NCBI GenBank assembly: GCA_951804945.1
Contig: OX638150.1
Span: 41,168,001-41,232,000 of the forward strand
From: Podarcis cretensis
Lineage: Eukaryota
Length of the DNA: 64,000 bases
Direction of reading: 5' to 3'
The notes beneath the pieces are model-generated. The model was not told where the DNA came from and did not search any database. It was given only the letters and a program-made list of their open reading frames with translations. This document shows positions 1,622 to 54,766 of the stretch, in pieces. Numbering within the stretch: the stretch's first letter is position 1; every line of letters starts with the position of its first letter. Position numbers and translations under genes: made by a program.

Positions 1622-1714
1622 AGCAAGATGCTGGTCTTGATGCTCTCTCTTCTGTCTTAGCCCGTCAAAAACAGATGGGGCAGGAAATTGGGAATGAGTT
1701 AGAGGAACAGAACG
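1622..1714 (+). CDS. STX8: Syntaxin-8 internal coding exon (93 bp; start of the SNARE motif; exon 6 by human numbering)
   Basis: Pyrimidine tract plus tgcag acceptor (AG 1620-1621); donor G|gtaagg at 1715. Phase 1/1; translates (E)QDAGLDALSSVLARQKQMGQEIGNELEEQN, recognisable as syntaxin-8. Confidence 0.97.
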
Positions 1715-1872
1715 GTAAGGACTGTCCTGCTTTCACAGTTTGATGGGTTCAAGAGAGCACACAGTCATTATTTTCGGTTACAGATAGGTAGCCGTGTTGG
1801 TCTGCCATAGTCAAAACAAAATAAAAAAAATCCTTCCAGTAGCACCTTAAAGACCAACTAAGTTAGTTCTTG

Positions 1873-1910
1873 GTATGAGCTTTCGTGTGCATGCACACTT
1901 CTTCAGATAC
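1873..1910 (-). ncRNA. Minimal type I hammerhead ribozyme motif (antisense copy)
   Basis: Exact reverse complement of 2211-2248. Confidence 0.78.
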
Positions 1911-2210
1911 ACTGAAACAGAAGTCACCAGACCCTTCTATATAGTGAGAAGGTGGGGAGGGGTATTACTCAGAAGGGTGGTGGGATTGGGTGATTGGCAG
2001 ATAGCTGTGATGAGCCTGTTGACGACATGACAAAGCCATTTTTCATCTTCTCACCCCTTGCTTTTTCCTGTAAGACCTATTGCAGTCGTTAAGAGTCGTC
2101 AACAGGCTCATCACAGCTATCTGCCAATCACCCAGTCCCACCACCCTTCTGAGTAATACCCCTCCCCACCTTCTCACTATATAGAAGGGTCTGGTGACTT
2201 CTGTTTCAGT

Positions 2211-2248
2211 GTATCTGAAGAAGTGTGCATGCACACGAAAGCTCATAC
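2211..2248 (+). ncRNA. Minimal type I hammerhead ribozyme motif (sense to STX8)
   Basis: GUAU-CUGAAGA-A-GUGUGCAUGCACAC-GAAA-GCUC-AUAC: stem I GUAU/AUAC, core CUGANGA and GAAA, stem II hairpin, palindromic AGCU stem III, predicted cleavage after C2244. Confidence 0.8.
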
Positions 2249-3448
2249 CAAGAACTAACTTAGTTGGTCTTTAAGGTGCTACTGGAAGGAATTTTTTTAT
2301 ATTATTTTCGGTGTTGTACCTTCTCATAGTTCTGTTCTACTGAAAACCTTTGGCGCGTCGTCTCTGCTGCATCATTATTAACCACTCCCAATGATAGTTC
2401 CCCCCTTCCCTGAACAGTAATAGAAGAGCCACAATTAATCATCTCCATTTCTAAGTGTGATGGTATAAAAGTGAGTTGACAACAGAGTTTGCTTCCCACT
2501 CCTAGCATTGGGTTTAGGCCGAGCAATGGGAAAGAGAGAGTGCTGAATTTTTAGGTCATCAAAGTACAGATTTCAGAGAAGTTTTAAAAAGTGAAGAATT
2601 GTTTCAAAACTGTTACTCAATCTGCCCATGTCCGCCTGGATCATTATCTCATGTATGGTTTGGTATGGCCTAGATGCCACTGTGTCATAAAATATTTACG
2701 ATGCCTCCCCTTCTCTTCCATCAGTTGCAAAATTAACCAGAGTACATTGGTGTGGATGCCCCTTGGACATAGAATTGGGCCTCAGGGTACTTTTATTTTG
2801 GGCCCTGTGCCTTTGTTGGGGGTCTGCCTCTTAGATCTAGAAAATGAGCTGTAAAAGGAGGACAGATTATACAGCAGTGTCCCAGCAACAGTAGTGCCTT
2901 CGCTCAAGAGGCTACAGTTTCTGTTTGTAGGTAGGTGTAGGGCAGGGCCTTTCAAACTGTGTGTCGGGATACATCAGTGTGTTGGCTGCAGTGTGTAGGT
3001 GTGTCGCACAAACACGCCTCATGCTTCTCCCAGGGCTGGAAAGGGCTTAGTTTAACCTCCGATTTGCTAGTAAATCTGAATTATTGTGTTGCAAAATTAT
3101 GCAGAACTGAATTACTGTGCCGCAAAATGATGCATGTCTGAAAAGCATGCCACCAACATGTAGCTCTGGTGCAGGGTGTTTTGTGTGTCAGGTCATATTT
3201 GTGCTTCTCAAGGGAGCCTTCCATGAGAGGAGAGAGAGACCTAAGCAGGTTAGGTGCGGTTAGCTGTTTGATTATTCCTGTCTGAGCCAGTAGGTGGCAG
3301 CACAGGACAGAAAAATGCCTAGTACATGATCGGTTCTTGACCTTGAGCAGCGCATGATTGGTGGTTTTTCCTGGAGCTGTGCAACGCACCTTTCCCAGTT
3401 TAACATTATTTTTACCTATAGTTTGCCCTTTGGTCTGGGAGTATGCTT

Positions 3449-3808
3449 TGTTGTTGTTTAGGCGTTTAGTCGTGTCCGACTCTTCGTGACCCCATGGACC
3501 AGAGCACGCCAGGCACTCCTGTCTTCCACTGCCTCCCGCACTTTGGTCAGTCTCCTGCTGGTAGCTTCGAGAACACTGTCCAACCATCTCATCCTCTGTC
3601 GTCTGCTTCTCCTTGTGCCCTCCATCTTTCCCAACATCCCAACATTTTCAAGGGAGTCTTCTCTTCTCATGAGGTGGCCAAAGTATTGGAGTCTCAGCTT
3701 CAGGATCTGTCCTTCCAGTGAGCACTCAGGGCTGATTTCCTTAAGAATGGAGAGGTTTGATCTTCTTGCAGTCCATGGGACTCTCAAGAGTCTCCTCCAG
3801 CATCATAA
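3449..3808 (-). mobile_element. BovB (RTE-clade) LINE, 5'-truncated 3' end
   Basis: ORF 3458-3787 reads RVPWTARRSN...YFGHLMRREDSLE...AWRALVHGVTKSRTRL, the BovB C-terminus; (AAC)n tail; 62-bp flanking duplication. Confidence 0.95.
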
Positions 3809-23488: not shown

Positions 23489-23774
23489 TATATTAAATTG
23501 GAGATTATATTTCTGAAGCTTCCTGTATAAGATAGGGCTTTAATAGTCCTCCTTTTCTCTTCAACACTCAGTTTGTTTGGTTGTGCATTGTCTTTTCCCT
23601 TCTAATTCCAAAACATAATAAAAATGACACTTTGCAATAAAAATGTTTCTCTGCCTTCCTCCCTCAATTATTTGACTATTGAAGAAGGAATATCTTTTTG
23701 GTTCCATCTGTGTCAGGTAACTACCCTGGCAGCCATTATTGACTGCCTCCAAACCCATGTCTTCATGTATCCAG

Positions 23775-23950
23775 TTACAGGTATCTGAAGAAGTGTGCAT
23801 GCACACGAAAGCTCATACCTAGAACTAACTTAGTTGGTCTTTAAGGTGCTACTGGAAGGAATTTTTTTTCTTTTCTTTTGTTTTGTTCATGTATCCAGAG
23901 GTGCTACTGGAAGGAATTTTTTTTCTTTTTTTCTTTTATTTTGTTTTGTT
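23775..23950 (+). mobile_element. Short Penelope-like pseudo-LTR fragment with duplicated 3' end
   Basis: 23781-23860 matches 2211-2290 almost exactly; ttcatgtatccag occurs three times (23762, 23886, 23949). Confidence 0.85.
23779..23820 (+). ncRNA. Minimal type I hammerhead ribozyme motif (sense to STX8, 6-bp stem I)
   Basis: AGGUAU-CUGAAGA-A-GUGUGCAUGCACAC-GAAA-GCUC-AUACCU; predicted cleavage after C23814. Confidence 0.8.
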
Positions 23951-26407
23951 CATGTATCCAGACAGCTAAGACAAAGCATGGTAGAAAATTCCTTACCACT
24001 TAGTAAGTTGGTTGCCTGTGTGGAGCTATAGAATTAGAAGATACTAACCTCTTTTCAACTTAGTAGCCAGAAGTGAAACCTTCGGAGTTTCACCGTTTAT
24101 CAGACAAAAAATTAGTATTAATAGCATATAAGGATGGCTTAGGCACTTACACTGTATACCTGAGGAGGCATGCCACTAAATGGTTTCTAGAATATTGTTG
24201 CACATCGGGGGTCAATGGTGCTCCATAGACAATTGACCAGCTGGACCACACATTGCAGTCTGCCTATGAGGGGACTTCTACAACTTAGTTATTCTAGAAC
24301 TATAGAAAAAAGAAATTCTATTTCCATATCCCACAACAGTTAAGCTTCTTAAATAATTATTAGAATGTTAAAAATTAAGATTGACACTTCAGTATCTTTT
24401 AAAGCATGTTGCTCGTTTCACAGCCCCCACCCCCGAAAGAATAGAAATATGTGACCCAACTTGAAAGTGTGAAGGCAAAAATGTGTGGCCTTGTTTCTCC
24501 AATTCTTGCTGAGTCTGAAAGTGCTACCCTTTCTTCTCTTCCACTGCCGGCTACCTTTTTATAAGGAATCTTTTGTTGTTGTATGAATTCATAATACAGA
24601 CACTGTTTCTAGCAATACATCAGCAAGCCTTACCATAGTCTGAGCATAAATGGGGGGAAACGTGAGACGCTAGTCTGAAATTCCACTTTTCAATGTGGCT
24701 GTACTGTTTGAAGAAGACTGAAATCTATGTGCCATGTTCTGCCTGTGTAATGAAGTTTGCATTGATATTCTGTTAATGCTGATGCCACTCAAAGTCCAAA
24801 ACAACTGCATTTAAGCAGCACATCTTCTTGCATGGGATGATCTTGCTTTTTAGTTGGGTTAACAGCCCGATGAGGTCACTTCTTTGCATATCAAGCTGGT
24901 GTGCATCACCTTTTGTTCCTAAAAACAAACTTCACAAAACCACCACACAAAATCATCCTTTTTTTATTTTCCCCTATTGATCTTCAAAGGATTGCATTCT
25001 AAACAGTATATTGTGGCCTGTGAATGCAAGTTCCCCTAGTTTAGGACCATTTCCTCTGCTGATAGGCAGAAGTTGTAAGGATCATTATACTTTTCATTTA
25101 AGCTGTAATTATATTAAATAGCATTTGTGATTGGTTTGTAGCACATAAGGGATGTTTTATGTTGCACTCGTTATCTGTACATAAAATGGGCAAGAGTTTG
25201 GTAATGGTGTGTCTGCAGAATGAGATGAGGGAGGGTGGTCCCACTTTATGCAAGTAAAGACAAAAGTCATAGCATGTGGTTCCAAAGTGGTTGAATAAGA
25301 GGTACCAACATTGCTTTTAATGAGGAGTTGCCAATACTAGGTTATTATGATCCAAGTGTTAAATTAGATAATCCTACCTAAAAAATTAGATTCTACAACT
25401 CACATCAATTATTCTCTAATGAAGAGGATATTTGCTTGATATATGCCAAGACTTAGAACCTCTCATTAAATCACATTTACTTACAATTTAGATTTTAGTT
25501 TCTGTAATGGTAATGTTGAAGCAACAAGCTCACCCCATCTAACCCAATTTGCCAGTGAAACCAAGGGGTGCTGGGCTTGCGAAACAGTGTCAGGGATAAG
25601 AGCTGTTCTCAAGCTTGTGGCACAAGCAGTCTGGAGCCCTGGGTTGCTCATGGGAGATGAGTACTCAGCTTTATCAAGACTGCATGCCAAATATCAGTTT
25701 TTCCTTGCTGTAAAAATAATATGTGAAAGGGCTCTTGGGAAATCAGCAATGTATATATTATATGAGAGTGGGAATGAGGAGGAATATATGTGGCATTCAT
25801 TCAGCAACCAGATGTAGAGGTCCCGAGCTTCATTTTTTCTTATTATAAACCTGTTGCGAATTAAAAACAAGAAAGAAACAAGCTACCGTGAGATCAGATG
25901 TAGCGTTACTGATGTCAGGTGCAGGATTTATTTTCAAGAACAAGATTTATCTGCGCAAGTCCTTTGGAGAAGTTGTCCCAGGGAAAGCTAGCTGTACTGT
26001 GAGTTTTATCTTCTTTCCAAACTACACTTGTTTTTAAGTGCACGTTTGCTGTTTTCCATGACCAATCACCCTCTTCCTAAAGATTTATAACTCAGCTGTT
26101 TCAATTTGTGATGGGCCGAAACTTTGGAATGCAGATTGTCAGTCCAGATGTCAGACCTTTCCTTAAAAAAAGAAAATGAAGGATTAAATTAGGTATGTGT
26201 GATTTCCCCCCCTTTTCTTTGAAGGCTCAAAATGTCACTTGAAGTCCTAAACTTATTTCCTGTTTCCTTTCAGATGTGATGGTTCACTTTAAAAAGGGAA
26301 AACATATTGCTGAGCACCAAGTGCTGAACTATAAAAAATAAAGTTAACTAGAGTCCTATGGCTAATGTGTAGACTTAAATGAGAATGTTATAGTATCATC
26401 ATATGTA

Positions 26408-53441: not shown

Positions 53442-54766
53442 TCAATCAATCAATCAAACCTTTATTGCATTAGCATACAGCCATAGCAGGATAAAACAAA
53501 ATGCTATAGACAAGCAACCAAACAAAATTCAAAGCGATATTACTGGGGTTATGACATTTAAAATTACCCTAAGACAATAATGTATAGATTTAGTTACCGG
53601 GGCCGGGAAACTAGAACGCGGATGTATATAAAGCATAAAATGGCCCCAAAATAGGCTCGGCACATTAGGTTAAAATGGTAATGAAAGAATTAAAACAGGT
53701 CCAGGTCTAGGACACACTACCCGGTCAGAATAGACCTGAGTTTCAAGGCCTGCACTATAAAGATTGCCACCCCACGTGAAACTTGGGGATTTGCGTCCAC
53801 AAGAAGCGATTTCAAACAGTCTTCCTTAGATGTAATGGTGGACGGGATCAAGCGGAGGAGCTTAGATCTTATTAGGTCATAAATAGGGCAGTAGAAAAAG
53901 AAATGTATGAAGTCCTCTCCTTCATTCATTGTGCATGGACATAGACGCTGAGTAATAGGGGTCTTAGAATAAATCCCCTGCAAGAAGGCCGTGGGTATAG
54001 AATGGAAACGGGCCATGGTGAACGCTCTTCTCAAATTGGGCTCCGTCAGGTCTATCAAGTAGTTGGCAAGTGATCTTACCACTTTCACTTTAGGGAGCCA
54101 CATGGAGAGGCGAGCTGTGGTGGACTGTGCCCGGTCCATGGCCTCGTCTCTTGTAAGAATCCAGGCCCGGATTTTAAGTTGGTCCCAAGCTGACAGCGTG
54201 TCAAGATCTGGGAGGGAGTAGTGTGCAGTAATAGTCTCCATGGCCTTGGACTATTTATTGCTGTGAGAACAAGTTAAAAAGGCTTGCCTGGCTAAAAGGG
54301 AACCTGGGGATTTGATTAATTTACAATAAAAACTAATAATTCTAATGTGGGCTCTCGCAACAATGGAGGGGAGGCCCAGTTCTGTTCTTAACTGTGCAGC
54401 AACCGAGCCCTTGGGGAGACCCAGTAACTTTCGTGCAAAAGAGTTTTGAAGAATCTCTAGCCGTTGTAGTGTTTTTAAATTCCACCCCCAGATTTCAACC
54501 CCATACAGTAGCATCGGGAGGACTTTGCTGATAAATGCTTTTCTGATTGGTGGAACCAACTGGCCGCCTTTTGCATAGAATTTCTCCAAGGCTTTGATGG
54601 TTCTACGGGCAGCCAGGATGGACATATTTAGGTGAGCTGACCAGCTAAGCCCATGCTGAAAAGTGATACCCAAATACTTGAATGCTGAACAATATTCAAT
54701 AGAGTGGCCCTCAAAGTTCCATAATGGCTTCCGAGTTTTCATGCCAAAAGTAAGAATTTTGGTTAT
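53442..54766 (-). mobile_element. RTE-X-like LINE, 5'-truncated and relatively young
   Basis: ORFs 54251-54742 and 53717-54241 are in one frame split by a single stop. Motifs FKYLGITF, LLYGVEIWG, LRTELGL and C-terminal RLCPC...EDFIHFFFYCPIY. AATAAA then a (TGAT)n tail; duplication tgttattaaatcaa at 53428-53441 / 54767-54780. Confidence 0.85.

What the first reader, a model, noticed from the sequence alone, without database searches (positions are those of the whole stretch)
1778..2300. Hammerhead ribozyme held in a 196-bp RNA foldback next to an STX8 splice donor
Seen: the insertion begins about 63 nt after the donor at 1715. Arms 1831-2026 and 2095-2290 are complementary with one mismatch, which would be a G-U pair in the pre-mRNA, around a 68-nt loop, and a 12-bp target duplication flanks it. 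The sense arm holds a complete minimal hammerhead core. Established: Penelope-like retroelements carry minimal hammerheads in their pseudo-LTRs and often insert with an inverted pseudo-LTR; long dsRNA is an ADAR substrate. Inference: the antisense arm is transcribed first and could sequester the ribozyme, giving a self-masked ribozyme. Editing or unwinding of the duplex might then affect cleavage or splicing of the neighbouring exon. Near-identity of the arms suggests a recent, possibly polymorphic insertion.
Basis: partly seen in the sequence, partly recalled or inferred. Interest (0 to 1): 0.8.

Follow-up and report, generated by a model that had tools for sequence, protein, structure and literature searches.

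The report
Young Penelope-type inverted insertion in STX8 intron
This is a recent 522-bp insertion of a very abundant lizard retrotransposon of the Penelope type, laid down as two inverted copies that each carry the family's usual minimal hammerhead motif; it is an ordinary product of how these elements insert, and nothing shows that it regulates the neighbouring STX8 exon.

Summary
Arms 1831-2026 and 2095-2290 are complementary with one U·G mismatch around a 68-nt spacer. A 12-bp target duplication flanks the element. It starts 64 nt after the donor of a real STX8 SNARE exon. The + strand arm carries a complete minimal hammerhead motif, with cleavage predicted after C2244. The motif meets every published hallmark of Penelope-like-element (PLE) min-hammerheads, although no Rfam hammerhead model detects it.

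The architecture is the textbook PLE insertion form: two head-to-head 5'-truncated copies, a 34-nt "tail" at one end only, and a target duplication. The family is very high-copy, and many other genomic copies are the same kind of fold-back.

The "self-masked ribozyme that modulates splicing" idea has no support. Masking follows automatically from the insertion mechanism, and forcing the ribozyme fold costs about 70 kcal/mol. Such motifs do not cleave as monomers in published assays. No RNA data for the carrier species were available. This scan has noted the same element type many times elsewhere in this genome. Verdict: ordinary member of a known kind.

The parts
1622..1714 (+). STX8 (syntaxin 8) SNARE-domain exon; donor GT at 1715-1716
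   Evidence: Translation of 1624-1713 matches 1GL2_D syntaxin 8 residues 7-36, E=1.2e-12. RNA contig record 9 of run X16 covers 1620-1712 as an internal piece of an 874-nt contig.
1767..1778 (.). Left copy of the 12-bp target-site duplication ATTATTTTCGGT
   Evidence: family D5. The empty site in organism B holds a single copy (record 25).
1779..1812 (-). 34-nt 'tail': extra 3' extension present only on the left (inverted) copy
   Evidence: Alignment A1. Family contigs end at two canonical termini, 1777/1779 and 1813/1814 (table 7). This matches the 30-40 bp PLE tail of PMC8557442 and PMC11167929.
1813..2026 (-). Left arm: inverted copy of the element's 3' region, 5'-truncated at 2026
1873..1910 (-). 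Hammerhead motif of the inverted copy (sense only on the minus strand; antisense in the STX8 pre-mRNA)
   Evidence: Descriptor scan.
2027..2094 (+). 68-nt spacer: further 5' sequence of the right (sense) copy, itself part of the repeat family
   Evidence: High-copy depth in bins 2014-2115. Contigs of other copies bridge 2094/2095 (records 14, 20, 21, 31). Contigs entering at 2025 carry a conserved upstream sequence (tables 2, 7, 8).
2095..2300 (+). Right arm: sense copy of the element's 3' region. The 3' end lies in the T-rich tract, with 6/8 microhomology to the target over 2301-2308.
2211..2248 (+). Minimal type-I hammerhead motif. Helix I GUAU/AUAC, core CUGAAGA, bulged A, helix II GUGUG-CAUG-CACAC, GAAA, palindromic AGCU, predicted cleavage after C2244.
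   Evidence: Features as defined in PMC4209133. Same architecture as the Poseidon_Ac hammerhead. Not detected by Rfam.
2301..2312 (.). Right copy of the 12-bp target-site duplication
23775..23885 (+). Second, single-arm 5'-truncated copy of the same family with an intact hammerhead (23779-23820), 94-97% identical

Best explanation
What it is. Positions 1779-2300 are one recent retrotransposition event of a very high-copy, apparently protein-less (or heavily 5'-truncated) Penelope-like-element (PLE) family of this lizard lineage.

Inferred mechanism, by analogy with the characterised lizard PLE Poseidon_Ac:
1. A GIY-YIG endonuclease / reverse-transcriptase dimer cut both strands of an AT-rich target, staggered by 12 bp.
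2. Both 3' ends primed reverse transcription at internal start sites near the 3' end of the element RNA. One side used the distal site, which keeps the 34-nt tail (1779-1812). The other used the proximal T-rich site, with microhomology to the target.
3. Both cDNAs stopped early, at the points mirrored by 2026 and about 2027, and were joined head to head.
4. Gap repair produced the 12-bp duplication.

The hammerhead. It is the family's own pLTR motif, carried along as baggage.

In the STX8 pre-mRNA. The two arms form a roughly 200-bp near-perfect intronic hairpin that is removed with the intron. The ribozyme is locked in the duplex and, being a monomeric minimal hammerhead, would not be expected to cleave anyway.

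Shown versus inferred. Shown: duplication plus empty site, inverted 5'-truncated copies, tail, motif, high copy number, recurrence of fold-backs. Inferred: the enzyme, the order of events, and the lack of host function.
For: - Arms, spacer and 12-bp duplication.
- Precise empty site in organism B, with flanks showing 4 substitutions in about 938 nt. Both junctions are present in an independent sample of organism A (records 17 and 24). All.
- Two canonical family termini 34 nt apart (loose ends at 1777 and 1813/1814). This matches the PLE tail (PMC8557442; PMC11167929).
- PAc protein cleaves and extends both strands and initiates internally (PMC11167929).
- An inverted 5'-truncated adjacent copy is a standard PLE feature. 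Dual min-hammerheads on opposite strands 100-700 bp apart were already reported (PMC4209133).
- The motif meets all min-hammerhead hallmarks. It has the same layout as the Poseidon_Ac hammerhead.
- Summed contig depth over the arms is 10^4-10^5 times the flanks, with a 3'>5' gradient. More than 600 joints reflect other fold-backs of the family in three organisms.
- A second, single-arm copy with its own target duplication lies in the window.
- Enforcing the hammerhead fold costs about 70 kcal/mol.
Against: - No reverse-transcriptase or GIY-YIG ORF in the window. No autonomous partner with this 3' end was identified, so assignment to PLEs rests on architecture and motif alone.
- Rfam hammerhead models do not recognise the motif.
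- Self-cleavage is untested.
- The interior of the fold-back is not spanned by any independent contig, so only the two outer junctions are independently confirmed.
- Lack of host function is an inference from absence of evidence. No RNA run of the carrier organism was available.
Confidence: 0.85

Rival explanations
1. One reading: a self-masked ribozyme switch. The antisense arm sequesters the hammerhead. ADAR editing or helicase unwinding of the duplex releases it, and cleavage or the duplex itself modulates use of the STX8 donor 64 nt upstream.
For: The geometry is real: the antisense arm is transcribed first, there are 196 bp with one wobble, and the intact core sits 64 nt from the donor.
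Against: - The arrangement is the generic output of PLE insertion and recurs hundreds of times in the family (PMC8557442; PMC4209133).
- The insertion is absent in a relative at 99.6% flank identity, so it is too young to have been shaped by selection.
- Min-hammerheads are inactive as monomers and weak even as dimers.
- The characterised lizard PLE hammerhead needs its own protein.
- Only one sense copy sits in the hairpin. The nearest other sense copy is 21.5 kb away.
- The penalty to expose the ribozyme is about 70 kcal/mol. Even the isolated motif prefers a non-catalytic fold, -9.2 against -6.0 kcal/mol.
Confidence: 0.03
2. The intronic hairpin matters as double-stranded RNA. It is edited by ADAR and/or diced into small RNAs that act on the high-copy family in trans or on STX8 expression.
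For: The predicted hairpin is long and near-perfect. From general knowledge, long intronic inverted repeats are ADAR and Dicer substrates in other animals. RNA contigs matching the family exist (X16).
Against: There are no raw RNA reads. RNA contigs over the arms come from another organism and from other copies. Their substitution spectrum shows no A>G excess (table 1). Unique intron flanks have zero RNA depth. A single young copy among about 10^4-10^5 is unlikely to be special.
Confidence: 0.07
3. A fold-back or MITE-type DNA transposon with long terminal inverted repeats and a 12-bp duplication.
For: 214-nt inverted arms reach almost to both ends, and there is a flanking duplication.
Against: - The termini are asymmetric: a 34-nt tail is present on one side only.
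- The family occurs as single-arm, 5'-truncated copies with their own duplications.
- The depth gradient runs 3'>5', and fold-back joints fall at many different positions.
- A hammerhead of the PLE type is present.
Confidence: 0.02
4. A non-LTR retrozyme unit that yields circular RNA by double hammerhead cleavage.
For: It carries a type-I hammerhead with a palindromic helix III. Retrozymes are proposed PLE derivatives (bioRxiv 10.64898/2026.07.22.740005).
Against: Retrozymes need two or more direct tandem hammerheads. Here the two motifs are on opposite strands, so any one transcript holds a single sense ribozyme. No tandem direct unit is present at this locus.
Confidence: 0.02
5. The palindrome is an assembly artefact.
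For: No independent contig spans the interior. Palindromes are a known source of assembly trouble (PMC8557442).
Against: Both outer junctions are reproduced with 0-1 differences in another sample of organism A (records 17 and 24). The arms differ at one internal site and have different ends, which is not expected of a chimeric read artefact.
Confidence: 0.02

Closest known systems
Penelope-like elements (Poseidon/Neptune groups) of reptiles, e.g. Poseidon_Ac (PAc) of Anolis carolinensis
   Same: - Head-to-head inverted 5'-truncated copy.
- A 30-40-bp tail at one end only, a target duplication, and heavy 5' truncation.
- The hammerhead lies 55-100 nt upstream of the insertion's 3' termini.
- Same hammerhead layout: core, 1-nt bulge, G10.1-C11.1, and GAAA + 2-nt palindromic insert + UC.
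   Different: - No RT/GIY-YIG ORF here. The sequence after the hammerhead is closed by a stop after 9 codons, whereas the PAc ORF starts in helix II.
- My short-string look-ups in the PAc file found no match, but they are uninformative because of the file's line format. No proper alignment to PAc was made.
Metazoan PLE minimal hammerheads (min-HHR; Cervera & De la Pena 2014, PMC4209133)
   Same: All descriptor features and the emergent hallmarks are present. The paper already reports pairs of motifs on opposite strands 100-700 bp apart, and thousands of solitary copies per genome, including in reptiles.
   Different: Helix II is 5 bp and a perfect 14-nt palindrome, shorter than the 6-8 bp typical of Schistosoma. 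Activity is untested.
Non-LTR retrozymes and Schistosoma Sm-alpha-type SINE-like hammerhead repeats
   Same: Short, non-coding, very abundant units carrying a type-I hammerhead with a weak, palindromic helix III.
   Different: Not in direct tandem at this locus. There is no evidence of circular RNA, and the insertion signature (tail, inverted copy) is PLE-like.
Intronic inverted-repeat SINE pairs (e.g. inverted Alus) as ADAR substrates
   Same: Two inverted retroelement copies in one intron are predicted to form long dsRNA.
   Different: Here both arms come from one insertion event and are near-identical. Editing was not observed or testable.

Membership tests
PLE minimal hammerhead (min-HHR, PMC4209133) | Conserved core C3-U4-G5-A6-N7-G8-A9 ... 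G12-A13-A14 ... U16.1-H17 | tested here: met
   CUGAAGA ... GAAA ... UC at 2215-2244. 0 hits in 300 random windows.
PLE minimal hammerhead (min-HHR, PMC4209133) | [quoted passage not shown] | tested here: met
   A2222 is bulged. G2223 pairs with C2236.
PLE minimal hammerhead (min-HHR, PMC4209133) | Short helix I (4-5 bp) and a helix II longer than the canonical 4 bp | tested here: met
   Helix I is GUAU/AUAC, 4 bp (6 bp in the copy at 23779-23820). Helix II is 5 bp with a CAUG loop.
PLE minimal hammerhead (min-HHR, PMC4209133) | Helix III reduced to a palindromic 15.1-16.1 segment that can pair only in a dimer | tested here: met
   A-GC-U (AGCU) at 2240-2243. The helix III stack alone is -2.5 kcal/mol. 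The cofold prefers a helix-II duplex instead.
PLE minimal hammerhead (min-HHR, PMC4209133) | Self-cleavage (as a dimer, or with the element's protein) | not testable with these tools
   No assay was possible. Contigs cannot show RNA ends.
Rfam hammerhead families (Hammerhead_1, _3, _II, HH9, HH10) | Match to a curated covariance model | tested here: not met
   No hammerhead hit at the gathering score or at E<=10 on 1.4 kb and on 91 nt. This is plausible for motifs that lack a helix III.
Penelope-like element insertion | Target-site duplication with a verifiable empty site | tested here: met
   12 bp. Empty-site contig in organism B (record 25).
Penelope-like element insertion | Adjacent inverted 5'-truncated copy (head to head) | tested here: met
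   Arms 1813-2026 (-) and 2027/2095-2300 (+). Feature as described in PMC8557442.
Penelope-like element insertion | 30-40-bp tail at one end only, corresponding to two RT start sites | tested here: met
   The 34-nt tail 1779-1812 is only on the left copy. Family-wide termini at 1777/1779 and 1813/1814 (table 7).
Penelope-like element insertion | ORF with a telomerase-like RT and a GIY-YIG endonuclease, in the element or in an autonomous partner | tested here: not met
   No such ORF in the 64-kb window. 10 of its 12 ORFs of at least 110 aa were scanned against Pfam and gave no hit. The genome-wide partner could not be searched, so this copy is non-autonomous or truncated.
Non-LTR retrozyme | Direct tandem repeats, each with a sense hammerhead, giving a circular RNA | tested here: not met
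   The two motifs are on opposite strands. There is no direct tandem unit at 1779-2300.
Fold-back / MITE DNA transposon | Symmetric terminal inverted repeats reaching both ends in all copies | tested here: not met
   There is an asymmetric tail, and single-arm copies have their own duplication.
ADAR-edited intronic inverted repeat | Clustered A-to-G differences in RNA relative to DNA of the same individual | tested here: inconclusive
   Only contigs from another organism were available. They show no A>G excess and no unique-copy coverage.

The most novel reading that the evidence does not exclude
This lineage-specific insertion sits 64 nt from an STX8 splice donor and produces a near-perfect hairpin of about 200 bp. 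It might measurably change STX8 processing, or yield hairpin-derived small RNAs or hyper-edited RNA. Because a very close relative has the empty site, it would then be a natural presence/absence experiment for how a fresh PLE fold-back affects a host gene.
Probability: 0.07. Interest if true: 0.45.

Novelty: new member of a known kind. Interest (0 to 1): 0.18.

Why it matters
It matters mainly as annotation. It shows that "ribozyme in a hairpin next to an exon" in this genome is the standard footprint of Penelope-type retrotransposition, so such findings need not be read as host regulatory devices.

It has modest value beyond that:
- The insertion is young and has a clean empty site in a close relative. 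It can serve as a population or phylogenetic marker.
- It could be a test case for the effect of a fresh intronic dsRNA hairpin.
- The locus displays every hallmark of the mechanism recently reconstituted in vitro: cleavage and extension of both strands, two RT start sites, and the tail.

Tried and rejected
- Rfam searches, three in all (whole window at gathering score; 1.4 kb and 91 nt at E<=10), found no hammerhead family. The sub-threshold MIR2118, MIR9672 and mir-598 hits are artefacts of any long hairpin and were rejected.
- Two exact-pattern scans of metagenome contigs for the hammerhead and for the 3' region found nothing. No extra family copies could be fetched, so no covariation analysis was possible.
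- A full-text search for the motif sequence in papers found nothing.
- Short-string look-ups in the Poseidon_Ac supplement are uninformative, because the GenBank text is broken into 10-nt blocks. I read the file instead.
- The Lunse et al. dimer paper (PMC5785218) is not held.
- Pfam on 10 of the window's 12 ORFs of at least 110 aa gave no domains. Pfam on the 30-aa exon peptide gave no hit, but the PDB sequence search did.
- Scan-note searches for an autonomous PLE, or for editing, in this genome returned nothing.
- Organism E could not be scored for presence or absence. Its contigs stop at 1778 and restart at 2355.
- The other STX8 exons were not located. Whether the copy at 23.8 kb lies in the same intron is therefore undetermined.

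Full report
**Observation.**
- The repeat finder gives inverted arms 1813-2026 and 2095-2308, 214 nt long and 98% complementary, with 68 nt between them. It also gives a 12-nt direct repeat ATTATTTTCGGT at 1767-1778 and 2301-2312.
- My base-by-base comparison finds four mismatches in the 214 nt. Three lie in the T-rich outer end (1817, 1820, 1830). One is internal, T1986 opposite G2135, which is a U·G wobble in + strand RNA.
- RNA 1715-2320 folds into one long hairpin at -450.5 kcal/mol, z = -80.

**The exon.**
- Positions 1624-1713 translate to QDAGLDALSSVLARQKQMGQEIGNELEEQN. This matches the syntaxin-8 chain of the endosomal SNARE complex (1GL2_D) at E = 1.2e-12. Pfam was silent on so short a peptide.
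- An 874-nt contig from a run guessed to be RNA aligns to 1620-1712 by an internal piece, with no differences. That is a spliced STX8 mRNA (record 9).
- This run is from organism E. DNA of organism E has C1713T, which explains why the alignment stops 2 nt before the donor.
- The exon is therefore 1622-1714 on the + strand, with GT at 1715-1716. The insertion starts 64 nt into the intron.

**The hammerhead.**
- On the + strand, 2211-2248 reads GUAU / CUGAAGA / A / GUGUG-CAUG-CACAC / GAAA / GC / UC^ / AUAC.
- It has the full catalytic core, a 4-bp helix I and a 5-bp helix II closed by G10.1-C11.1.
- It has one unpaired base after A9. Helix III is reduced to the palindrome AGCU.
- These are exactly the features that Cervera and De la Pena list for the minimal hammerheads of metazoan Penelope-like elements, including those that were not in their descriptor (PMC4209133).
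- A descriptor I wrote after that paper finds three hits in the window. They are this one, its mirror on the minus strand (1910-1873), and a second family copy at 23779-23820. It finds none in 300 first-order Markov random windows.
- Rfam's hammerhead models do not see the motif at any threshold tried. This is a real negative for those models. It is plausible for motifs without a helix III.
- The consensus of the experimentally studied lizard PLE Poseidon_Ac, read across its tandem junction, has the same layout: CUGAGGA, bulged U, helix II, GAAA-CG-UC.

**What the element is.** In sense orientation the two copies and the second locus align as follows.
- All share ...GGUGCUACUGGAAGGA-T(7-8)...
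- The copy at 23775-23885 ends after ...TTTTGTTTTG.
- The left arm continues for 34 more nucleotides, to 1779.
- The right arm ends in the T-rich tract at 2300. The next 8 target bases match the element's continuation at 6 of 8 positions, which is microhomology.

Laying contigs of four public runs shows the following.
- (a) The arms belong to a very high-copy family. Summed contig depth is 10^5-10^6 over the arms against 20-80 over the flanks. This is a qualitative measure, not a copy number.
- (b) The last 100 nt or so are four to five times more abundant than the inner part. This is heavy 5' truncation.
- (c) Family copies end at two canonical termini, 1777/1779 and 1813/1814, with unrelated sequence beyond them.
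- (d) The 68-nt spacer is itself high-copy. In other copies it is contiguous with the right arm (records 14, 20, 21, 31).
- (e) Contigs that enter at 2025 carry a conserved upstream sequence. The sense copy is therefore also 5'-truncated, and the source element is longer than 274 nt.
- (f) More than 600 joints link the left arm directly to the right arm at many different positions, in the DNA runs of three organisms. Head-to-head fold-backs are thus a routine insertion form of this family.

All of this is the published PLE signature:
- High 5' truncation, an adjacent inverted 5'-truncated copy, and a 30-40-bp tail at one end only (PMC8557442).
- A protein that cuts and extends both target strands and starts reverse transcription at two internal sites, whose spacing is the tail (PMC11167929).
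- Pairs of min-hammerheads on opposite strands 100-700 bp apart, already noted in 2014.

No RT or GIY-YIG ORF is present in the window. This copy is therefore non-autonomous or truncated, and its autonomous partner is unidentified.

**Age.**
- In organism A, another sample has both junctions. Record 17 runs 1329-1802 with 0 differences. Record 24 runs 2277-2800 with 1 difference.
- In organism B, a single 1755-nt contig runs from 1329-1766 straight into 2301-2800. It holds one copy of the 12-mer and only four substitutions in about 938 nt. That is a precise empty site (record 25).
- Organisms B, C and D hold 0.63-0.70 of the sampled words. That is the share expected for flanks without the insert. 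Only B was laid.
- The arms differ at one internal site in 196.
- Organism E could not be scored.

**Function.**
- In the STX8 pre-mRNA the antisense arm is made first, and the sense arm will zip onto it.
- Forcing the 38-nt motif into its helix I/II fold inside the element costs about 70 kcal/mol.
- Even in isolation the motif prefers a fold in which CUGAA pairs with an upstream UUCAG, at -9.2 against -6.0 kcal/mol.
- Two copies prefer to pair through the 14-nt palindromic helix II rather than through helix III.
- Published assays found no cleavage of monomeric min-hammerheads and only weak cleavage of dimers. The Poseidon_Ac hammerhead cleaved only with its protein, and cleavage was dispensable for insertion.
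- Only one sense motif lies in the hairpin. The next is 21.5 kb downstream.
- I conclude that the "masking" is a mechanical by-product of insertion and not a device.
- Editing or dicing of the hairpin is plausible on general grounds but could not be examined. No run of organism A is on record as RNA. The RNA-like contigs over the arms come from another organism and from other copies. The unique intron flanks have no RNA depth.

**Other notes.**
- Earlier notes of this scan describe the same element type at many other places in this genome and call it a lizard genome. I used them only as leads. The architecture, the tail and the motif were re-tested here.

**Verdict.** The regulatory interpretation is unsupported. 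This is an ordinary young member of a known kind.

Noticed in passing
window 23762-23960: Two direct 5'-truncated copies of the same family: 23775-23885 with an intact hammerhead whose helix I is 6 bp, and 23899-23947 with only the last ~49 nt. Each is followed by the same 13-bp target TTCATGTATCCAG, so the target is present three times (23762-74, 23886-98, 23948-60). This is either a tandem PLE-style insertion or a repeated hit on the same site.
   Followed up: partly
window 1387: All three DNA runs laid (organisms A, B and E) carry CTAAA inserted behind 1387, which the window lacks. This is either an assembly slip or a rare allele in the assembled individual.
   Followed up: no
window 2223-2236 (and 1885-1898): Helix II of the hammerhead is a perfect 14-nt palindrome, GTGTGCATGCACAC. 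Two RNA copies are predicted to dimerise through it (-35.4 kcal/mol) and not through the helix III palindrome. This could compete with the active dimer.
   Followed up: partly
window 2237 and 2244 (family variants, table 3): Among family contigs, 16-18% by depth carry G2237A (G12 of the core, expected to be inactivating) or C2244T (C17 to U). The family is decaying at core positions, and the intact core here reflects youth and not selection.
   Followed up: no
window 1599: Organism E has nine extra T in the polypyrimidine tract upstream of the STX8 exon acceptor.
   Followed up: no
window 3081-3587, 53717-54742 and other ORFs of 110-174 aa: The window has twelve ORFs of at least 110 aa. Ten were scanned against Pfam and none had a match. 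They are probably chance ORFs or decayed repeats.
   Followed up: partly
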